Shown here piece after piece: positions 17,100-63,354 of a stretch of 64,000 bases of DNA. The notes beneath the pieces are model-generated. The model worked only from the letters and a program-made list of their open reading frames with translations. It was not told the DNA's origin and ran no database searches. A program made the position numbers and the translations under genes. Numbering within the stretch: the stretch's first letter is position 1; every line of letters begins with the position of its first letter. Source of the DNA: Amoeboaphelidium protococcarum X5 (lineage: Eukaryota; Fungi; Aphelidiomycota); contig JALDTO010000137.1 in assembly GCA_023515725.1 (NCBI GenBank), forward strand, positions 1-64,000, given 5' to 3'.

Positions 17100-18197
<1,098 letters not shown>

Positions 18198-25618: not shown

Positions 25619-27146
25619 ATGGAAAGCGGAATTGTGAATGGAAGATATTACTTGCAAGAAATGGTTGGAGAGGGATCGTATGGCTAGTAATTTTTCAATT
25701 TACTTCTTAAAGTTCTGATCATTCTATCATTATATTTTAAAATTTCATTCGGGTCTTTGTAGAGTATGGCTATCCCTTGACATGGAGTCTCATAATCAGG
25801 TGGCCTTGAAGATTTTTGATATCACGTCTGCTGATAAGCCTACTAAGCAGCGAATTTAGAATGAGATAAAGACTCAGAAGAGTTTGGGCCGTCATAATAA
25901 CATTGTCTAGTTTTACTAATCTTGGCTTTAATAACCTTTAGTGTTCTGTGCCATAGAGTATGCTGCTGGCGGAGAATTGTTTGACAAGATTCAGCCTGAC
26001 GTTGGCCTAAATTCTAGTCTTGCCCATCACTACTTTCATTAACTGATCAGTGGACTGGAACATGTGCATAAACACGGTGTGTGTCATCGTGACATTAAGC
26101 CAGAGAATCTTCTGCTCGATTCTGATGGATAGTTGAAGATTGCAGATTTTGGATTTGCCACATTTTACATTGTCAACGGCGTGGTGCAGCGCAAAAGTCT
26201 CATATGTGGATCGCGGCCGTACTGTGCACCTGAAGTATTTTTCGAGAATTATAATGGTCAGCTGGTGGATATCTGGTCATGCGGAATTGTGTTACTGGTT
26301 ATGTTGACTGGGCAGTTGCCGTGGACTAGCGCTACGGAGGGCGATTAAGAGTTTGAACGCTTTGTCAATCTGTATTATAACGATCGCAGTCAATTGAAGA
26401 ATGTATCTCCTTTCCCAAGACTGGATAGTGAAGAAGTGTTCCAACTGCTGTGTGGAATGCTGAGCGTCTAGGAAGAGGATCGATGGTCCGTGTAGTAAAT
26501 TAAGAGCTGTAGGTGGTTTAAATAGAGGCGATTAAATCCATCTACTGAAGATATTACTTGTTCTCTGCTGTCTCAAATGGATATTGATGATGTGATGGCA
26601 TCACAAGACTTCATAGAACCTTATTCATCAGCTTCAGAAGTAGCCCCAGCTATTGGTGATTAAGATTTCGCACTATCCCAGCCAGCGATGATGTCAGAGA
26701 GAGGTGTCATGCAGACATCTGCTGTGCAGCATAAGTTCTCATAGTCTGACGCGATAAGTATGGATGGATTTTTGGGAACTCTGAGAACTCAGATGACCAC
26801 ACAAGGCCGTCAATATCCACTTGGAAATAGATTGACGCGATTCTATGCTCAGGCTTCTTCCATTGACGTTATAGCTGAGAGATTGTGCGCTATTCTTAGT
26901 GAGTATCTAATACAACATAGAGTGAATGATTAGGCTATAGAGTTTGACACTGCTGATAGGCGCAAAATACCGTTGAAGGGTCAGATTCGACTGCAAAAGT
27001 TGTCTAATGTTGAACACTAACGTCATCAACTTAATCCTATAATTCTTATCAATTTTGTTAAAACAAGAGGAGATCCTATGGAGTTTAAGAGATTGTATTA
27101 TGATATTAAGACCCAGTGCAAAGATTTGATTTGTAAAATACATTGA
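25619..27146 (+). CDS. CHK1: Checkpoint kinase Chk1
   Basis: GEGSYG[Q]V across intron 25687-25762, EYAAGGELFDKIQPDVGL, HRDIKPENLLL, and C-terminal KA1 motifs RLTRFY, DRRKIPLKG and RGDPMEFKRLY. Confidence 0.92.
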
Positions 27147-33976: not shown

Positions 33977-36900
33977 TCACTGTAAGACTTCAAATTTATT
34001 GGATGCAGATTGAGTTGAAGTCTACTCCTCGGTGATGGCTGAAATCTAATCAACTGACCCAATTGCAGGGATGGTATTGCGTTTCTTTTATTCTGAACCA
34101 GGTGCTTGGTCTTTATCTGCCGCGTTCATCGCCTGACTCACAATGTTCTACATTGGAATTCCACGTTTACCGCTGTGAGGCGATCCACCATGAGAGCGAT
34201 GTCCACTGCTGATAGAGTCAGTTTCAATGGAGCCACTGGAATTGATACTGTGTCTAGCGGTACCTCTCAGAGCCTTGAAAACGTGTAATTGAGTTCTCAC
34301 AGATCCGATAGCGTGTTGCCACTGCAAACGCTCTCTGGTCATCACCAGGCGAGACTCATCTCTTAGTCCGATAGGTACACCACAAACTACACAGCCATTA
34401 CCTGTAGGCAGCAGACGGACAACCACACCAAGAGGCAGAACTAGCAATCCCACTAAAACTGAAGCAGCCCACATACCTCCTGTAATAGGAACTGTCTTGA
34501 AGACACTTCCACCAAAGAACATGATGATAACTTGCACTCCGACAATAATTACCGACATTGGAAGAATAAATCGATTCTTGGTAATACCTTTGAACACATT
34601 CAAACTTCCATCAATAGTTCTGCAGTTAACCTGATTGAACAATTGCAGAAAGATGAACAGATTAAAGACAAAGGAATTCAACAACTTTGCCTAGTCTGGC
34701 TAACTGACATCAAGTCTGAAAATGGTTGGCCCAACGTACAGAGAGAACAAGTTGGCAAAGATCTAGAAGGCAGCCTGCCCCAAAATCATTTTCCACATCT
34801 CAACACTGATAAGCGGATCCTTCTTACTGTCAGGCATTCTGTTCAAAATGCTCAAATCCGGAGAATCAGTGGCCAGAGATAGCGCAGCCAGCGAGTCCAT
34901 GATCAAGTTCACCCACAACAACTGCACAGCTGTCAACACACTCTTGTTGTCCGAACTAGCGACGGCACTAACAAAAGCAATAGTCACGGCAGAGATATTG
35001 ACAGTCAGCTGGAACTACAGAAACTTCTTCACTGAATCGTTAACACTTCTTCCCCACATCATAGCCTTGACAATACTCGTGAAATTATCATCCATAAGAA
35101 TGATGGCACTAGCCTCTTTACTAACTTCGGTACCTGTGATACCCATACTGAAGCCAACGTCTGCCATTTTCAGAGCAGGAGCGTCATTAGTACCATCACC
35201 AGTCACTGCGACAGTCTCGCCCATCTCCTTCAACTTACCAACCAGAATCTACTTATCACCAGGACTAGATCTAGCAAGGACCTACAGGCGCGGAATAATG
35301 GCCTCCATATCTTCATTGGACAATCTTCTGAACTTAGGACCCTCCATAACTATTCCACCCTTGGTGTAAATACCACATTTGGTAGCAATTGCCTTGGCGG
35401 TATTGACGTTATCACCAGTGACCATACGTACAAATACACCAGCAGTCTGACATCTCTTCACAGCCTCAGGTACACCATCACGCAAAGGATCTTCAATACC
35501 GACCAGCAAGACAACGGCCAGGTTGCGCTGACACATTTTCTCCAACTTCTCTGCAGCCTCGGCAGGGACCTCTTTACCAATGTTGTCGGCGCCCACAATC
35601 TCAACGTACTCGCTCATAGGAATATCCTTGAAGGATACAACAATAGTACGCAAACTCTCATCAGCGAAATTGGATATTTTGCCTTAAATCTGATTTCTAA
35701 GCGCATCCGTCAGTGGAATGACTTTATAGCTGTTGGAGCTTTAATCTTCAAAAGCCATCACCTAGTCAGAATACTTTAGCACAATCTCAGACGCACCTTT
35801 GACGTAGAATCTGACCGTGTCATCATTGACTTTGATTAAAGTACTCATACTCTTACGCTCACTACTAAAAGGATACACCTAAAGAACAGAGCTCTCAGCC
35901 GCCTTCTTGTAAGTAGTATAGTCGTGTAAACCAATCTTGGCACAGAATTCCAGCAGAGCAGACTCAGTCTTATTACCCACAAAAGACTTGGCACCTTTCT
36001 AGTCAACTTCCTCAAAAGCGGTAGAGTTCATAACAACAGAATCTATCAAGAGATTAACATACTGAGGACCGCTGAATGACTAGGATTACACCTATCTATA
36101 CTTTGTATCCAGCACGTCTTCCTCCTTCTCATTCAACTTCTTCTTCAGCTTGGCAATACCACTATCATTCTTAAATTCAGTCTTGCACCCAATAAATCCA
36201 GCCACCACAGTCATTCTATTCTGTGTCAATGTACCAGTCTTGTCACTACACACAGTAGTAGCATTACCCATAGTCTCACAAGCACTAAGCACACGCACCA
36301 TGTTATTGTCCTTCATCATTCTGCTGGTACCATACGCCAATGCAATAGTAACAGCCAGCGGCAAACCTTCCGGAACAGCGACAACAATGATCACAATAGC
36401 CTAGATAACAATGTTGATGATGGATTCAAAGACAATAGCTCCCTCAGGAAATCCGTCCAAGCTCTCCTGAACGCAATATTTAACTAGTAGAATGATGAGA
36501 AGCAGAATACTGATACTTGCACCCAATTTGGCAATAGATTCTGCCAGACTGTCTAATTTCACTTGCAGAGGAGTGTCTTCAGTTGGCACACGAAGACCCA
36601 TCATAAGCTTACCATTGAAAGAGTGCTCACCGACACAGGTAACCAAGAACTGGCCAACACCCTCAGTAATCTTACCACCACTCAATACGAATGGATCGAT
36701 ATCAACTGCCCCTTCAGTGTACGGTGTCTTTCTGATCATGTCCGACTCTCCGGTGGCAGAACTTTCATCAGCCTTCAGATTGTGACCAGAGATCAGGATA
36801 CCATCCACATTCACCACATCACCCGGCTCAAGCAGTAAAACATCACCAACAACGATATCATAGATGGACAATAACTGCACATTGCCACTTCTCAAACACT

Positions 36901-37453
36901 TCACCTGACGGTCTTCCTTCTTGGCGTTCAACTTTCTAAACTAAGACTCTTTCTGGTAGTCATTGACGGACTGCACAAGCACCACAATAATAACTGCGAT
37001 AATGATAGCCACACCCTCAACCCAATGCGGATCCTTGTCCTTTGTCGTGGCACTGAGATCAATGTAAACTCCGACGACAAGTGAAACGAACGCAGCCACA
37101 CAGAGCAGAATCAACGTCTTGTCATGCAGAGCAATCCACACCAGCTCAAAAATGTTCAACTATCTCTACTCTGGCAGCCTATTAGCTCCATAAAATTCCT
37201 TTCTAGAACTGTAATCTCCATCCTTATATAGTCCAGTTAAGGGATTGCTCTTCAATGCTTTAATCAATCCGCTGACACCACCCAGAGAATGGAGATGATC
37301 AAGATTCTTGGGATCGAACATCTTCTACAACTCCTCAATAGGAACACTGAACTCTCCATCACCACCGCCACCACCACTTTACAGAGGCTTCAATTCATCC
37401 ACAGGAGCAGACTCACGCTGAACTACAGGCTTCTCATCTTTAACGTCCCCCAT
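33977..37453 (-). CDS. PMC1: P2B (PMCA-type) Ca2+-ATPase
   Basis: [54 protein letters not shown][TAG=Q]FQLTVN and [20 protein letters not shown]. Confidence 0.95.
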
Positions 37454-38186
37454 CTTTGACAGAGAGAGCGTATCAACTAATAAACGATCGGAACTAATTT
37501 TGCCACAGGTTATTCCAAAGTGGAAAGAGAGAGAGTGAGAGTGTGTTTGTGTTTGGGAGGAAAGAAAGGAGATGTGTGCGATCAGACAAAGGAAGAAGAA
37601 TAATCCGCTCTAGTAGCCGAATACATAACGGAACGTACAAACAAACAATGAACTATAAGAATAACCGGTAACGTGGTAACTCAGAATCAAACATTGTCAT
37701 CATAATCATCATTACTAATGCGTACTAAGACCATTAATCATAGCGACATATTATGGATACGATCCCTGAAGTATATCTGAAACGAAAGTTTGTATGCATG
37801 GTATAAGAGTTTAGCTATAATACTCTTATTTTATCCTGTGAATTACGTAAAGAATGAAAAAATATTAAAAGCAACATACCCGCAACTCTAGATTCCCACA
37901 TGCCGCAAGTTTGATCGATAACTTGAAGGTGTATCGTATATATGTGTAGGCGCTTTCCAGAGAGTTGATAGATAGACAGAAGTCTGATGCTCAAATGTGG
38001 CGCTCTGGATCGTGTTTCCGCAATGCACGATCACGAGAAACAGAGTTCATGTCGCCCCTTTTCATTTCAGCTTCTTTACTGGCGCCTTAGTAACGATCGC
38101 TTCACTTTGCTTTGTATTTCCATCTTCATACAATCAATCATATTAGTCATTTTTAGTATTTTATACTCGGTCAAGTCTAATTCAAT

Positions 38187-40248: not shown

Positions 40249-41276
40249 TTCTATTGATTTATAAGTGTTAGATACTTGATAATTACTTGTTCTAAGTTGT
40301 ATTCTTAATAAAAAAGATAAAGAAGAAGAGATATATCTAATAAGAGCCTTCATTAGAATTTGGTCTAATGTCACCCACCATGAAGTATCGACAACGCTCG
40401 AAACGGTGCGCTGATTGGAGAAGATCTGGCGGTCCATGATATTCTAACACGAGTGAATTCCATGAGGTTACACAGTAGTATAATGTATTTTGTTAGAATA
40501 AGCAAAATAGAATAGATAAAAGTCAATTAAATAGTATACGTGCCGTGTGGCTGAGCTCTATTGATCAGAGCTCAAGAAACAAAGTGGCGTAGCAAATTTC
40601 TCCTTATCCGAGACGACGGTTAAGGTTAGCGACAGAACATAAAACCCAACATATTTAAAGCTCGATGTAATGCTGCACGTTGATTAAATGCATTTAAAAA
40701 GAGTAAGTGTTAAAATAATATACCATAACATAAGTCAGTCAGTCAAGATGAGAAAGCTTGTTCACAACAAACTAAAATTAGTAGGCAGAACCAGGTGACT
40801 GTCTTTGATAAACTACTCCTCTAACTTCTAACATCATAAAGCTCCGGATTGATTTCCTGGTTTTCAAGGCAAACGTGCATTTTATCTATCAAAACTTCTG
40901 ACGCCTTGTGCTACGTGCGCTTCTCGAACAATTAGAACTGGCAGGGACACGGGAGACACCGTCCCAATGAAGATTTTTGTCAGTCATTGAAAACACTATT
41001 TCTAGATAAAATTATATTCAATAACTCAAATTAACTATTCAAAAAATCCTAAAACCCCACTTGTACGATAAATCTGTCAATAAAGGCGGAGCCATTGATC
41101 ATCCGCAGGCAATCGACTCAATCTACAGAGATTGAGATATCCTCTACTGTTGTCAATCCATCTAACACTGAAGATCACAGCGCCGATCGCGCGTCGTTCT
41201 ATGCGCCTTAACGTTTAATCTTTCTTTCCTCACCAAAAATCAATTTACTTTGTTTAACTGTTGTTGTGGAGGAATA

Positions 41277-44897
<3,621 letters not shown>

Positions 44898-48201: not shown

Positions 48202-50307
48202 TCATTTTCGACTTGACTTTCTAGTGCCAGCAGTATTATCAGCAGCGGATTGCTATTTCTTCACCTTGTTTAAGCGTTCATGTAGAGTACGCTTGCTACT
48301 ATTCTAGGCGGTAGAACTTGCACCAGCACCAACAGGAGCATTAAATAATCCAGGCGAATCTTTCCTATTTGGAGACCATGGAGCCATCTTTTCATCACGA
48401 CTGTAAGTGGACGGGCTCTTCAATATACTTCCATCAGGGCCATGAGCAACACCACCACCATTACCATCGGCACGCGGACGCTTCCTCTCAGGACTGACGC
48501 AGACATTTTCAAAAGTCTATCGAAGCACTTTGGCGGCATCAAGAGGTGACGAAGACTTTTAGTGTGATCTACCTCGTCTCTGCTGAGCTTTGAATTCATT
48601 GTCAAGTTCCATCATATCGAGAACGCGTTTAGGTGATGACGGTGCAATAGGCAAACGATTTAAAGCAGGAGATGCCGGTACTGACGTTGGAATGGCCACT
48701 TTAGATTACCTGTAGTCTTGCATGTTGGAATCTTACATCTGCTACTACTTAGCATCTAAAGACCCATTAATTTAAGCCAATGCAGGGATTTGATTGTTAA
48801 TGTTAGAAGGTGGTTTAGAGGCCTAATCTTTAGGCTCAAGTAGAAACATTGTAAACTAACCTCCACATCTGGCGGTAATTACACGCCTTCCTTTAAGTTG
48901 TACTTTAAATGGCACAGTCTCATCTTCCATTTCTTCATTACCCAGCTGATACGAGTGACCACTACCAAAAGTGTACAAACTACCACCAGCAGTGTATGCA
49001 ATGGTAAATCTAGATTGAGCATCTACTCCAACAACTTTGTCTTCATTCAGTGGTGGAAGTCCGTGTTGGTCATCAAATACAACTTGTGGCACTTCTCTAG
49101 GATATGGCTAATACTTTTACTTGTATGAGGCAGTGTTATCAACAGTCTAATTTCCTTATTATTACAGATTTGAATCACTATCAGCAGCACCATTCATAGC
49201 AAGTGTAGTTTCCAGCTCAGTATCCCGTTCATCTCCAAACACAGGTCGATCCGCTTCATAGCCCAACTATCCTTCCAGATTGGCACCCCACGTAAAGAGT
49301 CGACCATCTGCAGATACAGCCACAGAATGTGACTCTCCAGCAGCAATATCAATAATAGGCGGTAAATCTATTCTGGTCTTTCCATCAGCAGCTATGGCAT
49401 ACTGAACACGCTCGGGACCATTCAAGTGAGATAGTAAATCACCAAGACCCAGCTAACCACAATTATTGCAACCAAATGCATACAACTCGCCATTACTATT
49501 AACGTACATGGTATGATAAGCACCACCTGTAATCTTCACAATCTAATGCAGAATACTCTATCGCTTACCAAAACCTTTAATCTCATAAGGATCCAGATTA
49601 TTCTTGAATCTTGAACTAACACGTCTCCCCAGCTAGTATTCATCATTAGCACCAAATGCCCACAGCGTATCATCAGAGGTGATTGCAAATATATGATTTT
49701 CACCACTGCCCAGTGCAACTACTGTCTCTTTACCGAACGCACGCAATTTAATGGGCAAATTCTAACTCTTCCTCTCCATAAGTTTATTAAATCCGAGAAT
49801 TCCAGATGGATCTCTAAAACTACCCCAGGCGTAAACTTCACCAGCGTCACTCAGCACTGCACAAAAGGAATCGGCACAGACCATCTGGACCACTTTCACG
49901 TCCTGTCCATCATCATCTTTAATCCCAACTTTGAGTGGAGCCCAGGCTTCAGTGCCCTTCAACGGTTTCTCTCCATCACCATCATCATCACTAGAGTCCT
50001 CATCATCACTCTCCTCAATAACTTCTTCATGTGTAATTCTACCAAGAGCACCTTGGTCATTTATACCCCAGCTGTAGACGTTGCCATCTATGTCCAGAGC
50101 CAATGTGTGCTAACCACCACATTCCACGTCCACAATCTACTTGTCGTTCAACAACTTGACATTACCGGGCTTCCTGCGTTCATTCAACACAGCAGACAGA
50201 CCAAGCTCACCACCCACTCCAGAACCAAAAGTGAATACATGGCCAGCCTTCTGAGATCGTTTTATAATCTATCTCTAATGCTTATCAGGTGAATTTTATA
50301 GCCTCAT
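48202..50307 (-). CDS. RCC1: RCC1 family Ran GEF (Pim1/Srm1-like)
   Basis: RCC1 repeats VYSWGINDQGALGR, VYAWGSFRDPSGILGF and LYTFGSGHSYQLGN, then a basic low-complexity C-tail. Confidence 0.88.
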
Positions 50308-50524
50308 AACTCGAATATAAATTTTAATGACACTAGACTTAAGATACTATCACGAAATATAAATGAAGAAGAAAAAGAGAAACTGAACAAAAGAAAAGCG
50401 TTCAGATTCAGAACGCGATGAGCCGACGTCGAGATGGCATCTTGTTCATACAGATTAGCTCCTACAGTATAACAGAATCAAAAATCACCGACTTACTGTA
50501 TATTCATTCACTTAGAACAGATTT

Positions 50525-53128
50525 TCATCGCCTGCTTGCCCAAGGCCGTTATCTTTTAAGAACGGTGCAAATGATGAGGGAAAGTGAGTAAACGTCACCT
50601 GCTTTGAGAATCAGCGCGTTACGTTCCACTACATTCTATCTGTAGTTGTGAAGCACTTCTGGCGACGCGTAGTTGATGGACAAGCCTTTCAGTTCACTAA
50701 ACTTGAAGCCACTTATCTTTGGAGAATCGCTGTCTGCAATTTGAGCGATACCAAAATCTGTCAGTATAGGCACAAGCTGCCCATCTCGATCTACATCCAG
50801 TAGCACATTCTGCGGTTTCAGATCACAATGTATCACTTGCTGATCATGAACAAATTCTATCGTCTAGGAGAGGAACAGTGTTATTCTCATAAGACTTCGC
50901 TTCGTCAGCTTGTACATCTACGACGTGGGAGACTCTTTGTAGATGTATTGAGCCAAGGTGCCCAGAGGATAGTACTGAAGGAGCATTGCCGGTCTTTAAG
51001 TGTCATCATATCCAAACACGTGACAGATGAACGGCGCATCCCGGAATCGCCATAAAAGACTTAGCTCTTGATAGAATGACTGCACCTCTAGTGAACTCAA
51101 CGAATTTAGAGTACTATTCCAGAGTTTAAGTATCACATCATGGTCCTGCGATCGCTCTATTATATCTGAGTTCAATATTCGTGTGCGATACAACTTTGAT
51201 GTTCCACCTTTGGCCACCATTTACAATAGCTACACGTCTGTTGAAAGCTCAAACTTTAGAAATCCAGGTATGTACATAGCGTGCTGAGTCTCAACCTCCA
51301 TAGTGCGCCCATTTGTTTACGAGAAGGTTGTTGAGTAGACGGATTTCTTGGCCGAGATATCAGATGTAATGGTGTTCATTTCAATCAAGTTCTTCTACGA
51401 CGGAGGCATCAACTTTATCAGGTTTCTTTTTTATCGCCTTCGTTTATAGATAACGTAAAACAACACAATACCTGCTAGGATAACCACAAGACCCAGAATA
51501 CTTAATAGCATTATGACAAGCCACGATTGCAATAGTCCGTCTGTTTACTGCAATATTCCAGGTGGCAACTAACTTGATACAGACGATACTTTGAAGGTAG
51601 ACTGTGTGAAGGTCTAAACAGGAAACGATGCATATTATTGCCACTAAGACGACTGGGTAATGAGCAAAGTCGACGACTCCACAGCTGATGAAGGCTAAGC
51701 AACGGGTACTTCTGTTGTCTGAGGAGAAATTTCAGACAGTGCATCTCCAACTGATGAAGAAGATACTTATGCCGAATAGTTCACCGTGGAACTGCCATAG
51801 ATTAGGGAAGTAAACGTGGAAGCTGTCAATGAATTGAACATGCCCGGACTACTAGTGCTTTCTAATTGTGTCATTGTAGATGTACCATATAGTGTGCTTG
51901 AGTGCGTGCTATCAGAATCTACAACGACATACCCGGCTCCTAGATGAAAAGCAGCAACATTTACAAAGCCAAACTAGTCTACAACTATACCGAGCCCCAT
52001 GTCATCGAATTCACCACTGGAAGGAGCAGTAAAGAAGCTGGCAATGTAAGTCCATCTCATAGCCTAAGGATTAACGCGCACTATAATTCCAACTTTGCCT
52101 GAGCCATAAGGTAAAGTGCCCACTTAGCCAGCTGCCCAGCCTGTAGCCACCAAAAGGCCGGTGTATCGATCCAAAGTTATGGATTCAATAGCATCATCTT
52201 ACGTAGACCCATATATAAAGTTTTTATCCTACATCCAGGTACCTTCAAGATCTAATTAGGTTATCCACATATCAGACTTTGGTCCAGATGACGACTATTC
52301 CTTTTGTTAAATATAGCCAGCAGAGTAAATTGAAGATCCATCTTGGGAAAACACGATTGAATTTATACCAGCTCTACCTATAAAAGAGCTTTTATACTAC
52401 AGCTCCTTGACTAAAGTGCCATCTTCCGTAGAAATCTTGACAAAATACGCGTTCAAGTCATTGATGATTCCACCTGCATAAATATACCCATTTTAACGTG
52501 AATCCAAGAGCAGAGATCTCAATTCACAGCCATTTTGTTAACGCCGCTACACTGTCCACACGTGGCTACCATTAGTAGAATACTTTGAGATAAAACATTG
52601 ACTTGATGTCCATGTTGACGTATAATCTGGCGAGGAGGGAGAATTCAGTCGGCCATAAGTTGATCCAACAATATACAAAAACTCATTATCAACATCAACT
52701 TGAATATCCATCGCAAAATCGTCAGCTTTCGACCCGAAGACGCGTGACCATTGTATGGCTCCTGTTGCATTTAGCTTGAAAAGAGCAATATCAATGCCAC
52801 CAATGATGGGCTGATTGGAGATGAATTGATTAACGCAACGCCCCACTGTGTACACATCGCCAGACGCGTGATGAACACTCAAAGCTTCCAGCTGATTTCC
52901 CCTCTCAATACCAAAAGAGAGATCAACTGAAATTTCTTTATATTCAGGGCGGCCCTTTGCTATATGAAATAGCCCATTTTTAGAGCCACACATCCACTTT
53001 GCACCTTGGGAATCCAACGCTAGGTCTGTAACATTACTTGAAACAGCCAACTGTTATAAACTTTAGGGCGCCACCAGACTGAATTAGATAGTCGATAATG
53101 CCAAGACCACATAGAGTATCGCATTCAT
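50525..53128 (-). CDS. Receptor-like kinase 1: signal peptide, SBBP propeller, Ser/Thr stalk, TM, truncated kinase; 867 aa
   Basis: SBBP-like GGIDIALFKLNATGAIQWSRVFGSKADDFAMDIQVD..LYIVGSTYG. TM at about 51445-51510. Kinase motifs ILKLW, FYQE, HCDLKPQN, DFG, YASPE, GDVYS. Ends RPWASRR-TGA. Confidence 0.85.
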
Positions 53129-53330
53129 TTTATGAATTTTGTCAAGTGTGTATAAGTTAAAAAATCATTCAATACTAGACTGAATTAAGATATTCAAAGA
53201 TGACTAAGTCGGGCGGCAAGTCTTATAAATAGATGGGGCTCATCTTAGTAAAAGAATTTCATCATGAAATCTCAAATGTCCTGTACTGTATGTTCAAATG
53301 GTAATTAAATTCTTCTAAATTTATTAAACA

Positions 53331-54733
53331 TCATTACACTTACTATTAATTATAACGCTTTCCAGTAACAGTCCAAGGCTTTGAACGAGTCAAAATGTTG
53401 CACATCATTACAGCATATGCGTACACGTCGCCCGCTTTCAGCACTTGTGGTTACTTTTCAACGACCTGGCGCCTGAAATTCGACAAAACTTCTGGTGCAG
53501 CATAGGTCACCGTCAAACCTTTCTACTGACTTACTTGGAAAGCTGCAACCTGCAGAGCACTATTATCAGCAATACAAGAAATTCCAAAGTCAGATAGAAT
53601 AGGAACCAGCCAATGTGCAACTGGATCAGAATCTAACAGTACATTCTACGGCTTCAAATCACAATGCACAATTTGCTGATTGTGCATATAAGCCAACGTC
53701 TGAGCCAGAATCTTTAACAAAACATGAACCTAAACCTTACTGTATGGAAATTTAGTAACAGCTTGGCCTTCTCGAAGAACGTACGATGACAACGTGCCAA
53801 ATGGATAGTACTTCAGTAACATGACAGCTTCAAAAGTATCACAGTAAGTATATAGCTTTGTGATGTACGGAATATCTCTAAACTTCCACAACAAACTCAG
53901 CTCCTGGTAGAATGCCTGCTGATCATTCACAGACATTTACCCAATTGCATGATTACACACCTTGGCCACCGCCTGTTCATTACCGACCATATCATTGATT
54001 TTAGGTGCCAGAATACGGACAGCGTAAATTTTAGATGTGCCACCAGCAGCGACTTAATGCAGCAGCTAAAAGTCAGTTCCAAAATCACTCTTGAGAAAGG
54101 CAGGAATGTAGATTGCGTAATTAGTTGACAAAGCTGTGGTCTGCGTTTGCATAGCTGTTGCACTTGAAAGGTAACCAGTTTGCTGTGAAGATGAGTACGA
54201 TGTCGCTTTATATTCATGTCTTGATGTAGTATTAGCCTTTAACTATGTACGTCTTCTACGCTGACGACTTATCATAATAGCGCCAATCAAAACTGCAGCT
54301 ATAAAAGCAAACGCAACTATTCCCAATATACTTGCTAGCGAAATGATGCTAGAAGGTTACTACTGAGGAGCTTATGATCCATCATTAGGGCCAGAATCAT
54401 ACGACGCAGTGGATGTGAACTAGTAACTTACATAGCTAAAAGGGAACGCAAAAGTCAGCATAGTAGATGTAGTATGCGACGACGTCGAGCCAACCACGGT
54501 GGAACTATTCAAATTAACCAAAGACGACCATACATAAGTAGAAGATTCCATTGTTGTGCTCGTAAACATAACAGGAGTGGAAGACTTTGTAGTTGTAGTG
54601 GTAGTCGGAGTAGAGGTAGTAGTTGTTGTTGTCGTCGGGGTGGATGTTGTAGTGGTAGTCGTAGTAGTAGTAGTTGTGGTAGTAGTGGTCGTCGTTGTTG
54701 TTGTTGTGGTAGTAGTCGTTGTTGTTGTCGTAG

Positions 54734-54788
<55 letters not shown>

Positions 54789-56249
54789 TGTTGTAGTAGT
54801 GGTGGTTGTAGTTGTTGGAGTCGTTGTTGGAGTCGTTGTGGTGGTAGTAGTAGTTGTTGTTGTCGTAGTCGTAGGAGTCGTCGTCGTAGTCGTAGTTGTC
54901 GTAGTCGTAGGAGTCGTCGTCGTAGTCGTTGTCGTAGTCGTTGTTGTAGTTGTAGTTGTTGTCGTCGTCGTGGTAGTTGTCGTTGTCGTAGTCGTGGTAG
55001 TCGTCGTAAAAGGCTTCGTCGCGGTCGTCACCAACTTTGAAAGCGCATGACCCAAGTCCTAGTCAATTGCCAATCTGCCATTTGCTTCCAATTAGCACGC
55101 TATGTTCACATATCCATATCCATCAACTACTATTCCAAAACCGATATCATTCCAATTAGTTCCAACAGAGTAAAATCTATATAAAGTTATTCCAGCAAGA
55201 GTAGAAGGCGAAAGTCTCACGTAAAACCCATCTTTTCCACCCTCATTGAACATTCCCAAGAACTCACCCGTTGCCCATCCAGTGACCCAAACATTTCCGG
55301 ACGCAAAGTCGACAGTGATGGCTTCAAAAGCTTCTTCTTCCGAGGATCCCATTATCAAGCTCTTAGGCTACCTAGTACCAGCCAAATTGAACTCAGTAAC
55401 CCAGGCATCACCCTTTCCAGCCCAGGCTTTACCATCAATCGATCCCTAGATATACCCGGCGGCAAAAATACTAGAACCAGAAAGACTAAATGCCAGAGAA
55501 TTGAAGCCAGAGTTTGGAAAGCCAGAGTTTGAAGTGGATGAAATTTCGCTTCCATCATGAGGACTGAATATGGTCAAAAACGCTTTTTAATTGAAAACAC
55601 CACCAGCATAAATGTAATTATCATTGTTAGGCGCAACTAGAATTGATCTTATATCACATCCAGAAGTTGAAGTCTTTTGTACAGTCCAAATGTGTTGACC
55701 AGCAGCGCTATACTTTGATAGAAAGCACTGCGAAATGGACAGAGACTGACTTGAACCCGTGTTCACATAGCCATAAGTATTACCAGCGACGTACACAAAC
55801 TAGTTATACGAATCGACATATACTGTCTTTGGAAAGTCATTATACATTGAACCAAGTACACGCGTCCATATCACTGTGCCAACTGAGTTGACCTTAACCA
55901 GCGCAATATCAACTCCACCAATCAGTGATTGGCCATTAAACGCGTTGCTACAGCGACCCACAGCATACACCTCCAGCGTGGCAGTGTCAACACTCACAGC
56001 TTCAAATTGATTACCAGTGCCAGTACCATAGGTGACAGTGCGAATAATGTTTCTCGATGAAGGTTACAAATTTACCAGTGCGTAAAGGCCATTCTTAGAG
56101 CACGCAATCCACAGCGTGTTGTCTGAGCTTAATTTGACGTCTGTAGAGTTATCGCAAACAATTGGTGTGTAATATTGAGCTTGAGCGAGTTGAAACAGCA
56201 GTGCGATAATAAGCGCCAGCAGAGAGTGAAAGTATCTAAGCAAGATCAT
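53331..56249 (-). CDS. Receptor-like kinase 2: signal peptide, SBBP propeller, poly-Thr stalk, TM, truncated kinase; 972 aa
   Basis: ORF fragments 56064, 55800, 55587, 55092, 54420 and 53730 share one frame. Motifs HCDLKP[Q]N, SDFG, YAAPE, GDVYA. Ends KPWTVTGKRYNQQQVQ-TGA. Confidence 0.87.
54588..55007 (-). repeat. Poly-Thr (ACN)n coding stalk of kinase 2, with a pure (GTA)16 run at 54736-54783
   Basis: Degenerate trinucleotide repeat translating to about 140 residues of Thr with occasional Pro/Ser. Confidence 0.95.
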
Positions 56250-57541
56250 AAAAAATAGATAATCAGATTGTAAACACTTTAAAATGTTAATGTTATCGAT
56301 GGGACAGAAAGATGACTCTAGATGAAAAAAATTATTGACAGAGACTACTGCTGTTCACCAACTACCTATTTATAGCTCATATCAATGACAGCACAAAGTT
56401 ACTGAAAAGGCGGGTGTTGCGGTAACCAATTTGCATAAAATAAAACCCCATAATAATGGATAATCGCTTAACTCGAAGGATATATTTGGGACAGAACCGG
56501 ATTCCGTTTACTAAAACAAGTTAAATAACACTCTTGTTGATTCGGTACTGACGGATGAGCTAAAACTTGATCACTCGATCTTCTCACCTTATAAAGTTGA
56601 AACAACTGTATATATGATCGTTGCATCTCATATTCACTTCATTCTCTCTCTTTGTCCCTTCCTACACTTAAAAGATGCAGGCTGAAACAAGAAGATAGAG
56701 GGGCAGATGAAAAACCAAAAGCTTAACATCACAGTTCTCCGTGGTTTATTGAGTACAAATGCCGTCCCGGCCTCGATCTTAGAGCGCGCCTTTCTGTATC
56801 AAAATTCGGTTAGCGATTATTGTAAATTTCAAGAGGAAATCGCCGTCGAAGCACAAGCTGGGTAATATAAAGTGCCGCAGTTAACGAACAGATTACACTT
56901 CGTTTGTTGGCAGCCTCCTCCATTGGTAAGCTTTAGAATTTACACATTCAATTTCTTTAAACTTTTAGATTGTGACTCAATTCAACACCTTCTGAAAGCT
57001 CTTCACTTGAACAACTAGTGCGCCGAATCCAAAGACATTTCAACACAAAACGCGATGAACTTAATTCTACGACACCTGTTATAAACAACGAGGCTTTACG
57101 GCACATATGGAGAACTATTGACGATATGGAATGCAGCGAAGGAGTATATACAGTAAAAAGCACCTGATGACTTACTAGAACCGGATGTACGGAGTCTCAT
57201 AACTGTGGAATGTGCTAGTAAGGCTACATATCATTCCAGACAGTTGACTTGATTAAATGGTGCATGCGTGTCAATCCGACGACTTGTTATTGCCCAAATA
57301 TGCCACAAAACAGGCTTTTCAGTACAGTTGTAGTAAGTAGCATTGATCTTTACTGCAATATGTAACACATGTGGCTTGGCACCAGCAACGGCATCGTCAA
57401 AAGTACTAAAATATGTGAGCTTAAATGGCGAAACAGCCAACCATTTGGGTGTTGAAAGCCTTGAAAGAGATAAATGACAAGTTTTATCATAAACACAGTT
57501 ATCTCTTTATTATCATCTCATTTTAACATCAATATCAATTC

Positions 57542-60500
57542 TCATTATTTACTGTAACGCTTCCCATTTACAGTCCAAGGCTTTAAACGCGTCAAAATGT
57601 TGCACATCATTACAGCATATGCGTACACGTCACCAGCTTTCAGCACTTGTGGTTGTCTCTCCAGGAAATGATGTCTAAAATTCAGCAAAACTTCCGGTGC
57701 AGCATAAGCCACAGACAAACCTCTCTGCTAACTGACCTGGAAAGCTGCAACCTGCAGAGCACTGTCATCAGCGATACAGGAGATTCCAAAGTCGGATAGA
57801 ATAGGGACCAGCCAATGTGCAACAGGATCAGAATCGAGCAGTACATTTTACGGCTTCAAATCACAATGTACAATTTGCTGACTGTGCATATAAGCCAAAG
57901 TCTGAGCCAGAATCTTCAACAAAACATGAACTTGAACCTTACTGTAAGGAAAAACATTAATTGCTTGGCCATCCCCAAGAACATAAGACGACAACGTGCC
58001 AAACGGATAGTACTTCAATAACATGACAGCTTCAGACGTGTCGCAGTAAGCATATAGCTTTGTGATGAAAGGAACATCTCTAAACTTCCATAATAAACTC
58101 AGCTCCTGATAAAATGCCTGCTGATCATTCACAGACATTTACCCAATTGCATGATTACACACCTTGGCCACCGCCTGCTCATTGCCGACCATATCATTAA
58201 TTTTAGGTGCCAGAATGCGGACAGCGTAGATCTTAGACGTACCACCGGCAGCGACTTAATGCAACAACTAAAAGTCAATTCCAAAATCACTCTTGAGAAA
58301 GGCAGGAATGTAGATTGCGTAATTAGTTGATAAAGCTGTGGTCTGCGTTTGCATAGCTGTTGCACTAGGAAGGTAACCAGTTTACTGTGAAGATGAGTAC
58401 GATGTAGCCATGTACACAGGCTTTGACTAAGTGGTTGCCTTAAGCAATGTAAGTCTTTTATGCTATCTATAAACCATGATAGCACCTATGAATACGGCAG
58501 CAATGATAACAAATGCAACAATGCCCAAGATACTTGCGAGAGAGAAGAGACTAGAAGGTTACTACTGAGGAGCCTATGATCCATCATTAGGGTCAGAATA
58601 AGACGACGCAGTGGATGTGAACTCATGACTTGCATAACTAAAAGAGAACGCAAAGGTGAGCATAGTAGATGTTTTATGCGACGACGTAGACCCAACCACG
58701 GTGGAACTATTTAAACTAACAACCAAAGACGACCATACGTAAGTAGACGACTCCAATGTTGTGCTAGTAAAAACATCAGCAGTGGTTGTCGGAGTAGAGG
58801 TAGTAGTTGTTGTTGTCGTGGTAGTAGTCGTTGTTGTCGTGGTAGTTGGAGTAGTTGTTGTGGTAGTGGTAGTCGTTGTCGTCGTGGGAGTAGTAGTCGT
58901 CGTCGTTGTAGTCGTGGTAGCAGTGGTAGTTGGAGTTGTTGTAGTAGTTGTGGTAGTAGTTGTTGTTGTAGTCGTTGTCGTAGTTGTTGTCGTAGTTGTT
59001 GGAGTTGTTGTGGTAGTAGTAGTGGTTGTTGTTGTCGTAGTCGTAGGAGTCGTAGTCGTCGTGGTAGTAGTTGTGGTAGTTGTTGTCGTAGTTGTCGTTG
59101 TCGTAGTTGGAGTTGTTGTTGTAGTGGTGGTGGTAGTCGTAGTAGTCGTCGTAGGGGTCGTCGTAGTCGTCGTGGTAGTAGTTGTACTTGTTGTAGTCGT
59201 CGTGGTAGTAGTTGTTGTACTTGTTGTAGTAGTAGTAGTCGTGGTGGTCGTCGTCGTAGTAGTCGTAGTAGTAGTCGTGGTAGTAGTTGTTGTCGTCACA
59301 GGCTTAGTCCTTGTCGTGGCCAATCTCTAAAATGCACGAGCCTAGCCTTATTGAACCGCTATTCTACCATCATTCACCAATTAGCAGGCAATATTCACAT
59401 ACCCATAGAAATCGACCACTATGCCAAGACCCATATCATCCATAGTACTGCTTACGGTGTAAAAATTATAGGCACTCTACCAGTTTAAAGTAGAAGGACT
59501 CAGTCGCAGGTACACACCATCCTTTCCTCCATTGTTACTGAATGAGCCCGCAGTTCCTTTTATCCAGCCAGTGACCCAAATGTTTCCGTTAGCAAAGTCA
59601 ACATTAATTGCTTCGAAAGCATCTTCAGACGATGAACCATATATCACACTCTTGGCCGACCTAGTACCAGCTAAATTAAACTCAGTAACCCAGCCATCAC
59701 CTAGTCCTGATGCAGATTCTCCATCGATCGAACCCTGGATGTACCCGGCAGCAAATATAGTAGAACCAGAAAGACTAAACGCCAAAGCATTAATTCCAAT
59801 TTTAGTGTAGCCGGACACAACTGTGGATGAGATCTAGCTTCCATCATCAGGACTGAATATAGTCAAGTGTGCATTAACATTGTTAAACACACCACCAGCA
59901 TAAATGTAGTTAGCATTGTTAGGCGCCACTAGAATAGATCTTATATCACATCCAGAAGTTGAAGTCTTTTGTACAGTCCAAATGTGTTGACCAGCGGCGC
60001 TGTACTTTGATAGAAAGCACTGCGAAATAGACAGAGACTGACTTGAGCCCGTGTTAACATAGCCATAAGTATTACCGGCGACGTACACAAACTAGTTGTA
60101 CGAATCGACATATACTGTCTTTGGAAAGTCATTGTACATTGAGCCAAATATACGCGTCCATATCACTGTGCCGACTGAGTTGACCTTAACCAGCGCAATA
60201 TCAACTCCACCGATAAGTGATTGGCCATTGAACGCGTTGCTACAGCGACCCACAGCATATACCTCCAGAGTGGCAGTATCAACGCTAACAGCTTCAAATT
60301 GATTACCAGAGCCAGTGCCAAAGGTGACAGTGCGAGTAATAGTTTATGTTGCAGGGGCCCATTGAACCAGAGCATAAAGGCCATTCTTAGAGCCAGCAAT
60401 CCAGAGCGAGCCATCTGAGCTTAATTTCACGTCAGTTGCGTTATCGCTGACAACCGTTGTGTCATATTGAGCATGAGCGAGTTAAGGCAGAAAAGCAAGC

Positions 60501-60547
60501 AGCAATGACAGCAGATGAAGATAATAATACTAATGCTTAATGATCAT
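57542..60547 (-). CDS. Receptor-like kinase 3, close paralogue of kinase 2; 1001 aa
   Basis: Same architecture, with long peptide segments identical to kinase 2. Ends KPWTVNGKRYSKQ-TGA. Confidence 0.87.
58780..59298 (-). repeat. Poly-Thr (ACN)n coding stalk of kinase 3
   Basis: About 170 codons, mostly Thr, punctuated by Pro. Confidence 0.95.
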
Positions 60548-60850
60548 TAAAGTTAGATAATCAATTTATCAACACTTTTAATTGTTACAGTTATTACTAT
60601 TATTATTATTGAAGTAAGATGACACCATAAGAAGATAAAGACTGTCAAACACTTAAGTGGGCATGTGTGTTACGACTTGCGCTATTTTTAGCACTCAATT
60701 AAGGACATGAGGTTATTATGTAAAAAAACTCGAGAGGGTAGAATAGAGTTGCAAATAACTGTAGAGAATATACTCCGGATAACAATGAAACAAAGCTTTA
60801 ATCAAAGGTCGATAAAGGCGATGGAAGCATTCGTTAAAAGTTAGCAAAAG

Positions 60851-62025: not shown

Positions 62026-62553
62026 CTGAAGATACGATAAAGCTGAATCTTGAAACGGGCCGCCTTATGCCCTCATACCGCTCTCGTTCTCATTGTTCTT
62101 ACTATATTGTGTAGTACATCTGTTGTGCAACTAAGAGCCAAAGAGAAAGCAGATGCAATCATGATAACTTTGATGTTGTCCTAAGGTAATGTACTTTAAA
62201 GTTGTTTCGTCTCTCTCTTCTCTGCAAGTAAATGAAGTCGCGTTGCATTTCTATAGCTAGTACTAGTAGTTCACATGGTTATAATCCTACGCACCTATCT
62301 TACTTCTTTCAAATTCAAAGGCAATGGTGCCTAGCTTTCGAGAATGTTCTCACTTGACAAACTTTGGTGCGATAATTAGAGATTATAATACTGCCGTTTG
62401 ACGAATTCACGGCGGCTCCTGGGTGTGGTTAGAGTGATAAGGGGCAACTCGGGATCCGATGATGTGCAGTCCTCTATTTTACACACTTTTCTCTCTCTCT
62501 CTAAACATTATAATCTCGGAAATCCATTTAATTCTCTGACTCGAATTTTCGAC

Positions 62554-63354
62554 ATGCAGGTACTTTTGATTTTGGCACTGTTTGTCATTGCTGTAGCTCA
62601 TTTGAATGAAGCTGCTGTGGTGTCGACGCGTAAAAGTGGCAAAGTATCATCAAGTAGTGGTAAATCATCTGGAAAATCACCATTCTCTTCATCAAGCAGT
62701 AAGAACAAGCGCACCACTAGTGAAAGTAAGAAGATTGAAAAGGTTGCGTCGGAACTGGAGAAGGAATTGTCCTAGGATCAGCCGTAATAGTAGTAGCAAT
62801 TGAGGCAGGTATCATTCGTTGGAGTACCTGAGTCTAGCTATAATAATTTCTATGTCAAGGCTTAAAAATCTGCTAAACGTCCATACTATTTCCAGAGAGA
62901 TGTGCCGTTTGCAGCTATCTCTTCTTTCACCGGGTACGATTTGTCCTTTGACAGTGACGCGTACGATAAGCTGGAGAATTATGCTGAAAATCACATGCAG
63001 ATTTTCAGCGGTGCACTGAACGAATTCACTTCTGGTAAAGACACGTACGTTGCAACCGCTCTATCTGTTGACGCGTTCAAGAGTGGGAATTACAAGTTTG
63101 TTCCATATATGTCCCGCACTAATGATGGCAATATCAATGTTGTCATTCTGAATGAGGACAAGTATGAGCTGATTGTAAGAGGATCATGCGATGTCAAATA
63201 GGACGTGGATTAGATTGACTCCAACGTCAACTGGCGTGATGATGATGACGCGGCAAAGTTTGCTTGCAGCCTGTGGAATGGCTTCCGCAAATATGTCTCG
63301 TCAGGTGATCCTCAAATGGGTTATGTGCCTGCTAAGAATGCTCAGCGGTACTGA
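62554..63354 (+). CDS. Secreted protein of unknown function, 266 aa
   Basis: Signal peptide MQVLLILALFVIAVAHLNEA, a Ser/Lys-rich segment, a poly-Gln run spelled TAA-TAG-TAG-TAG-CAA, and a globular C-terminal half. TGA at 63352-63354. Confidence 0.75.

What the first reader, a model, noticed from the sequence alone, without database searches (positions are those of the whole stretch)
50525..60547. Tandem cluster of SBBP-propeller / mucin-stalk receptor-like kinases
Three co-oriented, apparently intronless genes each encode a signal peptide, SBBP-like beta-propeller, Ser/Thr stalk, single TM helix and cytoplasmic kinase. SBBP repeats are typical of prokaryotic surface proteins, and single-pass receptor kinases are absent from model fungi. 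Inference: a chimeric, expanding receptor system that holds a variable propeller away from the cell surface, plausibly for sensing host walls. Receptor-like kinase expansion in aphelids may already be reported, so novelty needs a literature check.
Basis: partly seen in the sequence, partly recalled or inferred. Interest (0 to 1): 0.8.

Follow-up and report, generated by a model that had tools for sequence, protein, structure and literature searches.

The report
Propeller-on-stalk receptor kinase gene cluster
Three neighbouring genes of the alga-killing fungal relative Amoeboaphelidium protococcarum each encode a cell-surface receptor: a bacterial-type seven-bladed propeller on a long sugar-bearing stalk, one membrane span, and an internal protein kinase that lacks the last third of a normal kinase domain. 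What they sense is unknown.

Summary
With TGA as the only stop (TAA/TAG = Gln), the minus strand carries three uninterrupted paralogous genes: A 50525-53128, B 53331-56249 and C 57542-60547. Each encodes a signal peptide, a ~370-aa ectodomain, a Ser/Thr or near-pure poly-Thr stalk, one TM helix and a protein kinase.

The ectodomain is a divergent SBBP-type seven-bladed propeller. Pfam's cut-off is missed or barely met. However, sequence search reaches true SBBP proteins (E 1e-23 to 1e-69) and CylK (2e-10). An AlphaFold model (pLDDT 88.9) matches bacterial SBBP clusters at TM 0.86.

The kinase keeps all catalytic residues (non-RD: HCD) but stops just after helix F. It therefore lacks the GHI subdomain. 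All 15 subfamily members, and 12 further kinase reading frames at the other loci sampled, stop at this point.

Both domains are under purifying selection (dN/dS 0.05-0.29). The subfamily has about 16 copies in the assembly, and there are at least 104 related kinase matches.

Receptor-like kinases in aphelids are already reported (Mikhailov 2022, cited in PMC10608142). This scan also found the same family on other DNA of this genome (s1-563795, s1-552539).

The parts
50525..53128 (-). Gene A: complete coding sequence, ATG to TGA, 867 aa under the TGA-only code
   Evidence: It is 86.6% identical over its full length to NCBI MIR68_005911 (P0006) and 92.5% to MP228_003900 (P0151), with the same start and end.
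53063..53128 (-). Gene A predicted signal peptide
   Evidence: Hydrophobic leader read from the translation. No signal-peptide predictor was available.
51935..53062 (-). Gene A ectodomain: divergent SBBP-type seven-bladed beta-propeller
   Evidence: AF2 model of the 86%-identical homeolog: pLDDT 88.9, pTM 0.90, 28 strands. Fold matches: CylK TM 0.80 and SBBP clusters TM 0.86. By sequence it hits CylK at 2e-10.
51524..51934 (-). Gene A Ser/Thr-rich stalk (up to 50% S/T in a 40-aa window)
51446..51523 (-). Gene A transmembrane helix, followed by KRRRQKR on the cytoplasmic side
   Evidence: Hydropathy maximum 3.14
50528..51274 (-). Gene A kinase domain (non-RD HCD; DFG; SPE), ending 8 residues after 'PW' with no GHI subdomain
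   Evidence: Pkinase 49.5 bits on a stop-free piece. The full-length homeolog covers Pkinase profile positions 19-199 of 263. Alignment.
53331..56249 (-). Gene B: complete coding sequence (972 aa from Met36 of the ORF)
   Evidence: It pairs with C181_B2 in the tree.
55080..56177 (-). Gene B propeller ectodomain
   Evidence: 40% identical to the ectodomain of A and 76% to that of C. One SBBP repeat scores 16.9 bits, below the 20.5 cut-off. The same repeat in homeolog B2 scores 24.8 bits, over the cut-off.
54348..55079 (-). Gene B stalk, including the near-pure Thr/Pro run (tandem array 54589-55001)
54270..54347 (-). Gene B transmembrane helix
53334..54119 (-). Gene B kinase domain, truncated after helix F
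57542..60547 (-). Gene C: complete coding sequence (1001 aa from Met8 of the ORF)
   Evidence: It pairs with C181_D2. A Logan contig from SRR845265 is 100% identical to 58790-59966.
59369..60469 (-). Gene C propeller ectodomain
58550..59368 (-). Gene C stalk, with the Thr/Pro run (tandem array 58800-59293; periods 3 and 24)
58469..58549 (-). Gene C transmembrane helix
57545..58318 (-). Gene C kinase domain, truncated after helix F
   Evidence: Pkinase 40.6 and 20.0 bits on two stop-free pieces. Alignment.

Best explanation
The three genes encode type I single-pass receptor Ser/Thr kinases of Amoeboaphelidium protococcarum.

Shown:
- Each is one uninterrupted reading frame under the TGA-only code.
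- The ectodomain is a divergent SBBP-type seven-bladed beta-propeller.
- The cytoplasmic part is a TKL-like, non-RD protein kinase. It keeps the catalytic Lys, Glu, Asp, Asn and the DFG Asp, but ends right after helix F.
- Both domains are under purifying selection.
- The genes belong to a tandemly duplicating subfamily inside a large receptor-kinase superfamily.

Inferred:
- The leader is cleaved, and the propeller sits outside the cell on a heavily O-glycosylated, extended Thr/Pro stalk. At roughly 0.25 nm per residue, 140-180 residues would reach tens of nanometres.
- A still unknown ligand binds the propeller, possibly a glycan or a surface protein of the algal host or of bacteria.
- Ligand-driven clustering brings the kinase domains together. 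They then phosphorylate each other's Ser/Thr/Tyr-rich juxtamembrane segments or a downstream partner.
- As in other non-RD kinases, activation probably does not depend on activation-loop phosphorylation.
For: Gene models and code.

Paralogy over both domains: A is ~41% identical to B and C; B and C are 76-83% identical.

Propeller:
- A 180-aa ectodomain piece finds 1852 proteins at E<=1e-3 and 265 at E<=1e-10.
- The best non-aphelid hits carry PF06739 SBBP at 76-380 bits or are named SBBP repeat-containing protein.
- The aphelid sequence alone hits only CylK in the PDB, at E 2e-10.
- The AF2 model has pLDDT 88.9, pTM 0.90 and 28 strands.
- Fold matches: CylK TM 0.80, E 8e-18, against ~0.6 for other seven-bladed propellers; bacterial SBBP clusters TM 0.86, rmsd 2.4-2.7 A over 352-360 residues.

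Kinase:
- Pkinase scores 77.5 bits on the full-length homeolog.
- B-Raf and EGFR are the best solved relatives.
- The catalytic motifs are invariant in 15 paralogs.

Selection: dN/dS is 0.05-0.16 for the kinase and 0.09-0.29 for the ectodomain, with dS 0.26-0.58.

Topology: N-glycosylation sequons follow the leader, and an Arg/Lys cluster follows the TM helix.
Against:
- The kinase lacks the GHI subdomain, which normally stabilises the C-lobe and docks substrates. Catalytic competence is therefore not assured.
- The glycine-rich loop is degenerate (xGGxSK).
- AF2 did not produce a confident kinase model (pLDDT 32.7).
- Pfam's SBBP model does not reach its cut-off on the window's own proteins (16.9 and 17.7 bits against 20.5).
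- The signal peptide and the TM helix were judged by eye and by hydropathy only.
Confidence: 0.7

Rival explanations
1. These are surface adhesins or glycocalyx proteins whose cytoplasmic kinase-like tail is a pseudokinase or scaffold. Without helices G-I the domain cannot fold into an active C-lobe. It would act only as a docking or nucleotide-binding module, or it would need a partner kinase with a complete domain.
For: - The kinase covers only Pfam Pkinase positions 19-199 of 263.
- All 15 paralogs stop 4-12 residues after 'PW'.
- The GHI subdomain is one of two features that define eukaryotic protein kinases (abstract of PMC3415842).
- The G-loop is degenerate.
- AF2 gave no confident kinase fold.
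- More distant single-pass kinases in the same genome have complete domains and could act as partners.
Against: - Pseudokinases usually lose catalytic residues. Here the beta3 Lys, alphaC Glu, catalytic Asp and Asn, DFG Asp and APE are invariant across paralogs that are only 40-45% identical.
- The kinase is the most constrained part of the protein (dN/dS 0.05-0.16).
- The AF2 failure is explained equally well by a shallow alignment made of fragments.
Confidence: 0.22
2. The gene model is an artefact. Either the ectodomain and the kinase are separate genes, or an unseen 3' intron and exon supply the missing C-terminal third of the kinase.
For: No transcript data could be obtained. The low-complexity Thr run could in principle hide a gene boundary.
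Against: - About 16 paralogs at 31-94% identity all keep ectodomain, stalk, TM helix and kinase in one TGA-free frame of 863-1074 codons.
- The stop falls within 0-12 codons of the same residue in every paralog. With only one stop codon in this code, chance would not place it so consistently downstream of a splice donor.
- No conserved coding sequence lies within 900 bp downstream in any frame, apart from allelic DNA similarity or the next family gene.
- Only 202 bp separate the stop of B from the ATG of A.
- Two independent NCBI annotations use the same start and stop.
Confidence: 0.05
3. The genes are decaying copies (pseudogenes) of a once functional family.
For: Under the standard code they appear full of stops. 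A few family copies elsewhere do contain TGA stops or are partial (C264:1658586, C264:2026507; L010, L011b/L012b).
Against: The apparent stops are all TAA/TAG, which encode Gln here. There is no in-frame TGA and no frameshift in A, B or C. Purifying selection acts on both domains.
Confidence: 0.02

Closest known systems
Aphelid receptor-like protein kinases reported in the Amoeboaphelidium genome paper (Mikhailov et al. 2022, Curr Biol, doi 10.1016/j.cub.2022.08.071; known here only through its citation in PMC10608142)
   Same: Same organism group and the same general class, membrane receptor-like kinases. [quoted passage not shown] These genes are very probably part of that set.
   Different: The paper is not in the held library. 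I could not check whether it describes the SBBP-type propeller head, the poly-Thr stalk or the truncated kinase. NCBI names the proteins only 'hypothetical protein'.
Plant CRINKLY4 (ACR4) receptor kinases
   Same: Type I single-pass receptor Ser/Thr kinase with a seven-bladed beta-propeller ectodomain (abstract of bioRxiv 10.1101/2020.08.10.245050). This is the closest eukaryotic analogue in how it would work.
   Different: - The CR4 propeller is of the WD40/RCC1 type and is followed by a cysteine-rich domain, not by a mucin-like stalk.
- Its kinase is a complete RLK/Pelle domain.
- I found no sequence link. The best solved kinase relatives here are B-Raf and EGFR, and the best solved propeller relative is CylK.
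Bacterial Hanks-type Ser/Thr kinases with extracellular propeller sensors (for example metagenomic protein P0143; from general knowledge, M. tuberculosis PknD with an NHL propeller)
   Same: A protein kinase joined to an SBBP propeller in one membrane protein. P0143 has Pkinase at 167 bits plus SBBP at 178 bits, and it matches the aphelid ectodomain piece at E 9e-13.
   Different: - The order is the reverse: kinase at the N-terminus, propeller at the C-terminus.
- P0143 has a complete kinase domain (profile positions 2-256 of 263).
- It has no Thr stalk.
- Its kinase is only remotely similar to the aphelid kinase (E 1.3e-5 against the family profile). The two combinations therefore look like independent assemblies.
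Bacterial SBBP repeat surface proteins and the CylK propeller (PDB 7fh6, 7ron)
   Same: Same propeller family by sequence (E 1e-23 to 1e-69 to proteins carrying PF06739; 2e-10 to CylK) and by predicted fold (TM 0.80-0.86).
   Different: Those are secreted or surface proteins or enzymes without a kinase. The aphelid repeats are so divergent that Pfam's model mostly stays under its cut-off.
Giant-virus collagen-repeat / propeller proteins (Indivirus, Klosneuvirus, Fadolivirus; BFVD models)
   Same: Similar seven-bladed propeller fold, TM 0.77-0.79, E down to 2.5e-17.
   Different: These are not better matches than bacterial SBBP clusters (TM 0.86). They have no kinase, and I did not test sequence-level kinship.

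Membership tests
Pfam PF06739 SBBP beta-propeller repeat | At least one repeat or whole-protein score over Pfam's gathering cut-off (20.5 bits) | tested here: inconclusive
   Window gene B piece: 16.9 bits. Other window pieces: no hit. B/C-type fragment P0001: 17.7 bits. A-type full-length P0006 and P0151: no hit. The homeologous B2 repeat at C181:147504-147605 scores 24.8 bits, over the cut-off.
Pfam PF06739 SBBP beta-propeller repeat | Significant sequence homology to bona fide SBBP proteins | tested here: met
   phmmer with a 180-aa ectodomain piece gave hits at E 1e-23 to 8e-69 to proteins that carry SBBP at 76-380 bits. One is named SBBP repeat-containing protein. CylK is hit at 2e-10 with the aphelid sequence alone.
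Pfam PF06739 SBBP beta-propeller repeat | Seven-bladed beta-propeller fold matching known SBBP propellers | tested here: met
   AF2 model: pLDDT 88.9, 28 strands. TM 0.86 and rmsd 2.4-2.7 A to ESM Atlas clusters in which 89-100% of members carry PF06739. TM 0.80 to CylK. This is a predicted model of the 86%-identical homeolog, not an experimental structure.
Eukaryotic protein kinase (Pfam PF00069 Pkinase) | Score over the gathering cut-off (31.7 bits) and presence of the catalytic residues (beta3 Lys, alphaC Glu, HxD Asp, Asn, DFG Asp, APE) | tested here: met
   40.6 and 49.5 bits on window pieces. 77.5 bits on full-length P0006. The motifs are invariant in 15 paralogs.
Eukaryotic protein kinase (Pfam PF00069 Pkinase) | GHI helical subdomain (helices G, H, I; subdomains X-XI). 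Together with the activation segment, it distinguishes EPKs from eukaryotic-like kinases (PMC3415842). | tested here: not met
   The match ends at profile position 198-199 of 263, at the protein's C-terminus. All paralogs stop 4-12 residues after the 'PW' that follows helix F. There is no downstream exon. More distant paralogs in the same genome do have the 63-74-aa tail with the W..dP..RP motif.
Non-RD kinases | The residue before the catalytic Asp is not Arg | tested here: met
   HCD in all 15 paralogs.
Plant-type RLK/Pelle (IRAK) family | Kinase domain groups phylogenetically with RLK/Pelle/IRAK kinases | not tested
   There are only hints. The best solved relatives are B-Raf and EGFR at E 4e-10 to 5e-12. 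An Xa21-like plant RLK appears at E 1.3e-6 in a word search. I built no kinome-wide tree. I file the kinase as TKL-like, not as RLK/Pelle.
Type I single-pass membrane receptor | Cleavable signal peptide, one TM helix, N-terminus outside and C-terminus inside | tested here: inconclusive
   A hydrophobic leader with A-x-A, one hydropathy peak (maximum 2.85-3.14 over 19 residues), an Arg/Lys cluster after it, and sequons on the N-terminal side. No dedicated predictor or experiment was available.
Mucin-like O-glycosylated stalk | Long Ser/Thr/Pro-rich low-complexity segment; O-glycosylation | not testable with these tools
   The composition is shown: up to 97.5-100% S/T in 40-aa windows in B and C, and 50% in A. 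Glycosylation itself is inferred.

The most novel reading that the evidence does not exclude
A whole clade of aphelid receptor kinases works as active protein kinases without the GHI subdomain. By my sampling this clade has roughly 45 genomic copies in the assembly. It derives from complete TKL-like receptor kinases that still exist in the same genome. This would be a natural 'minimal EPK': it keeps the activation segment and helix F but has shed the substrate-docking and allosteric helices. It is fused to a propeller of a mainly prokaryotic (or giant-virus) type, which serves as the sensing head of a lineage-specific recognition system in a parasitoid at the base of Fungi.
Probability: 0.35. 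Interest if true: 0.7.

Novelty: new variant of a known kind. Interest (0 to 1): 0.5.

Why it matters
Aphelids are the sister group of Fungi, and model fungi lack single-pass receptor kinases. This lineage-specific receptor family shows how a phagotrophic parasitoid near the fungal root may sense its surroundings. It does so by joining a propeller type that is mainly prokaryotic to a eukaryotic kinase.

The consistent, selected loss of the GHI subdomain is the less expected point. If these kinases are active, they challenge the view that helices G-I are needed for a stable, regulated eukaryotic protein kinase. They would also offer a compact natural scaffold for studying kinase core function.

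A. protococcarum destroys algal mass cultures. Surface receptors that may take part in finding the host are therefore reasonable targets for study.

Tried and rejected
1. Standard-code ORF calling gives only fragments. I rejected it in favour of the TGA-only code.
2. Pfam on stop-free ectodomain pieces gave almost nothing. SBBP membership had to be established through homologues and fold.
4. The first ectodomain alignment (A1) put C-terminal fragments in the wrong blades. I replaced it with a checked subset (A2).
5. The AF2 model of the kinase domain failed (pLDDT 32.7). I drew no structural conclusion from it and ran no fold search on it.
6. Word-based protein searches with the full protein and with the kinase region found only the A-type orthologues plus a few weak hits. 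They even missed known paralogs, so they say nothing about distribution outside this species.
7. I looked for a hidden downstream exon or a conserved read-through extension and found none.
8. A tblastn search found no remnant of a family gene between B and C.
9. I considered a giant-virus origin of the propeller, a lead from s1-552539. The viral models match at TM 0.77-0.79, which is no better than bacterial SBBP clusters at 0.86. The origin stays open, because most sequence hits are unnamed metagenomic proteins.
10. The primary genome paper is not held.

Full report
**Reading frame and organism.** Under the standard or bacterial code the region has no ORF above 249 aa. Across the whole window that code gives no ORF of 300 aa or more. 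With TGA as the only stop there are 34 such ORFs, covering 56.6 kb of the 64 kb. Three of them lie head to tail on the minus strand: 50525-53164, 53331-56354 and 57542-60568. They hold 32, 23 and 23 in-frame TAA/TAG codons.

Between paralogs B and C, 11 of the 32 positions with TAA/TAG are TAR in both. Nine pair TAR with CAA/CAG. One TAR is the Gln of the catalytic-loop motif HCDLKPQN. TAA/TAG = Gln is the code known for Amoeboaphelidium protococcarum.

The organism is confirmed by database proteins. P0006 is NCBI 'hypothetical protein MIR68_005911 [Amoeboaphelidium protococcarum]'. It equals the ATG-to-TGA ORF of the syntenic copy on contig C181 of this same assembly. P0151 (MP228_003900, another assembly) is 92.5% identical to gene A, with the same first and last residues.

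**Architecture.** Each translation shows the same order of parts:
- a hydrophobic leader ending in a small-x-small site;
- N-x-S/T sequons;
- a ~370-aa ectodomain with six or seven 'VDxxGNxYxxGxT'-like motifs;
- a low-complexity stalk, Ser/Thr-rich in A and an almost pure Thr run with scattered Pro in B and C (DNA tandem arrays at 54589-55001 and 58800-59293);
- one 26-residue hydrophobic helix followed by an Arg/Lys cluster;
- a kinase domain.

A is ~41% identical to B and C in both ectodomain and kinase. B and C are 76-83% identical. No other ORF of the window belongs to the family, and there is no family remnant in the 1.3-kb gap between C and B.

**The ectodomain.** Pfam on stop-free pieces gave only one sub-threshold SBBP hit, 16.9 bits against a 20.5 cut-off. 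The Pfam SBBP model run over the whole genome did exceed the cut-off on one repeat of the homeolog of gene B (24.8 bits).

Because the family scans left the domain open, I used the exhaustive protein search with a 180-aa stop-free ectodomain piece of a close paralog. It found 1852 proteins at E<=1e-3 and 265 at E<=1e-10. The best non-aphelid hits carry PF06739 SBBP at 76-380 bits. One is a Kiritimatiellia protein named 'SBBP repeat-containing protein', and another is from the alga Ochromonas/Chlorochromonas danica.

The aphelid ectodomain alone matches only one solved protein, the cyanobacterial enzyme CylK, at E 2e-10.

An AlphaFold2 model of P0006 residues 22-402 (86% identical to gene A) was built on a register-checked alignment. 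It has mean pLDDT 88.9, pTM 0.90 and 28 strands, that is seven four-stranded blades. Its fold matches are:

| Library | Best match | TM-score |
|---|---|---|
| PDB | CylK (E 8e-18) | 0.80 |
| PDB | other seven-bladed propellers (G-beta, YncE) | ~0.6 |
| ESM Atlas | bacterial clusters with 89-100% PF06739, rmsd 2.4-2.7 A over 352-360 residues | 0.86 |
| BFVD | giant-virus collagen-repeat proteins | 0.77-0.79 |

So 'SBBP-like beta-propeller' is right by homology and predicted fold, although the repeats are too divergent for routine Pfam annotation.

**The kinase.** Pkinase is over its cut-off on window pieces and scores 77.5 bits on the full-length homeolog. The match covers profile positions 19-199 of 263 and ends at the protein's last residues. 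The best solved relatives are B-Raf and EGFR (E 4e-10 to 5e-12). The B-Raf alignments stop about 60 residues before the end of the B-Raf domain.

In an alignment of 15 paralogs the beta3 Lys, alphaC Glu, HCDLKPxN, DFG/DLG, APE and the helix-F motif GD(V/M/I/T)(Y/F) are conserved. Every protein stops 4-12 residues after the 'PW' that follows helix F. Helices G, H and I are therefore missing. According to Taylor et al. 2012 (PMC3415842, abstract), the GHI subdomain is one of the two features that set eukaryotic protein kinases apart from eukaryotic-like kinases.

This is not a gene-model artefact, for four reasons:
- No conserved coding sequence lies within 900 bp downstream in any frame.
- Only 202 bp separate the stop of B from the ATG of A.
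- The stop position is fixed across paralogs that are only 40% identical.
- Two NCBI annotations end at the same place.

The HCD motif makes these non-RD kinases, and LKPxN points to Ser/Thr specificity (general knowledge of kinase motifs). An AF2 run on the kinase domain failed (pLDDT 32.7), so it tells nothing either way.

**Family size and history.** The ectodomain piece of gene A finds 21 places in the assembly. After fetching them, about 16 are ectodomain-stalk-TM-kinase ORFs of 863-1074 codons. These lie on contigs C137, C181, C146, C264, C212, C192 and C155, mostly as pairs of diverged copies.

C181 carries the syntenic counterpart of this cluster, but with four genes rather than three. 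In a maximum-likelihood tree A pairs with A2, B with B2 and C with D2. The B/C duplication therefore predates the split of the two contigs, and A is a deep branch.

The kinase domain finds at least 104 places at E<=1e-10. I sampled 18 further loci:
- Twelve ORFs end 0-6 residues after the end of the family's kinase profile.
- Several of these have SBBP-like motifs and Thr stalks upstream.
- Eight more distant ORFs have tails of 63 residues or more, most of them 63-74, with canonical GHI motifs.

The truncated kinases are thus a derived clade within a larger set of single-pass receptor kinases.

**Selection.** Nei-Gojobori estimates with the TGA-only code give dN/dS of 0.09-0.29 for the ectodomain and 0.05-0.16 for the kinase. 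Synonymous divergence is 0.26-0.33 between the C137 and C181 copies and 0.46-0.58 between B and C. The genes are functional. The propeller changes 2-3 times faster than the kinase, but there is no gene-wide sign of diversifying selection. B and C are mosaic: residues 119-238 are 91-97% identical at the DNA level, and residues 268-446 only 62-78%. This suggests gene conversion or recombination within the array.

**Interpretation.** The best reading is a family of type I receptor Ser/Thr kinases. An SBBP-type propeller is held away from the membrane on a mucin-like stalk and signals through a non-RD, GHI-less kinase.

- Shown: gene structure, domain identities, conservation and family context.
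- Inferred: surface location, O-glycosylation, ligand binding, clustering-driven activation and catalytic activity.
- The main rival is that the truncated kinase is a scaffold or pseudokinase. The perfect conservation of catalytic residues speaks against it.
- 'Sensing host walls' is a reasonable guess for an algal parasitoid but has no support here.

**Novelty.** Receptor-like protein kinases of aphelids have been reported. PMC10608142 cites Mikhailov et al. 2022 for differences in receptor-like protein kinase sets between aphelids and fungi. The primary paper is not in the library, and other searches found nothing more specific. NCBI calls the proteins 'hypothetical'.

Other agents of this scan described the same family on other contigs (s1-563795, s1-552539). 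My results agree with theirs on the propeller, the stalk, the kinase and purifying selection. They do not support the view that giant-virus proteins are the closest structural match.

I rate this a new variant of a known kind: a receptor kinase with an SBBP propeller head and a GHI-less kinase. Whether the 2022 paper already describes these details remains to be checked.

**Limits.**
- There is no transcript evidence.
- A Logan contig from run SRR845265 is 100% identical to 58790-59966. Whether that run is RNA or DNA is unknown to me.
- Proteins containing TAA/TAG were passed to the tools only as stop-free pieces or as database protein ids. Full code-6 translations were used only inside scripts.
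- The structure model is of the 86%-identical homeolog, not of the window's own protein.

Noticed in passing
L001:2233-8004 and L004:2-6458 (G000:C181:142233-156458): The syntenic counterpart of this cluster on contig C181 has four family genes (A2, B2, C2, D2) against three here. C2 and D2 share an identical first 316 aa, as does the 950-bp contig C238, which points to a very recent duplication or an assembly duplicate. Synonymous divergence between the C137 and C181 copies is ~0.26-0.33, very high for alleles.
   Followed up: partly
window 53331-56354 versus 57542-60568: Genes B and C are mosaic. DNA identity is 91-97% over residues 119-238 (blades 2-4) but 62-78% over residues 268-446 (blades 5-7 and the start of the stalk). 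This suggests gene conversion or recombination inside the array.
   Followed up: partly
G000, many contigs; sampled loci L015-L032: There are at least 104 genomic matches to this kinase type. The nearer ones (12 of the 20 sampled ORFs) share the truncation after helix F. Eight more distant ones keep a canonical GHI tail. Several truncated ones carry other SBBP-like propeller heads and Thr stalks.
   Followed up: partly
window 48202-50349 (-): The gene immediately downstream of A, 217 bp away, reads as an RCC1-repeat protein: repeated 'G..H...L...G.VY.WG.N..GQLG' motifs with a long basic, low-complexity tail. I ran no family scan on it.
   Followed up: no
window 17562-17993 (-) and 26025-26330 (+): Two other, unrelated protein-kinase-like stretches in the window give weak tblastn matches to the family kinase (27-33% identity).
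   Followed up: no
window 41172-44897 (+) and 33977-37696 (-): Two large ORFs (1242 and 1240 codons, TGA-only code) are paralogs of each other: 28% identity over 970 aa, E 7e-63. Function not examined. The C181 contig has the counterpart of the first (L005:2885-6610).
   Followed up: no
P0143 (metagenomic, Logan; 1114 aa): A bacterial-style protein with a complete N-terminal Pkinase domain and six or more C-terminal SBBP repeats. It has the same two domains as the aphelid receptors but in the reverse order.
   Followed up: partly
window genes A, B, C: juxtamembrane segment just before the kinase G-loop (for example B residues ~745-757): A motif 'T-x-Y-A-I/L-Y-I-P-x-F-L-K' directly N-terminal of the degenerate glycine loop is nearly invariant in all 15 paralogs. 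It may be an N-lobe extension or a Tyr-based docking or phosphorylation site.
   Followed up: no
window 62236-63354 (+): A 373-codon ORF upstream of gene C has an internal Met followed by a hydrophobic leader and a Ser/Lys-rich segment. Another first-reader note calls it an orphan secreted protein. Not examined further.
   Followed up: no
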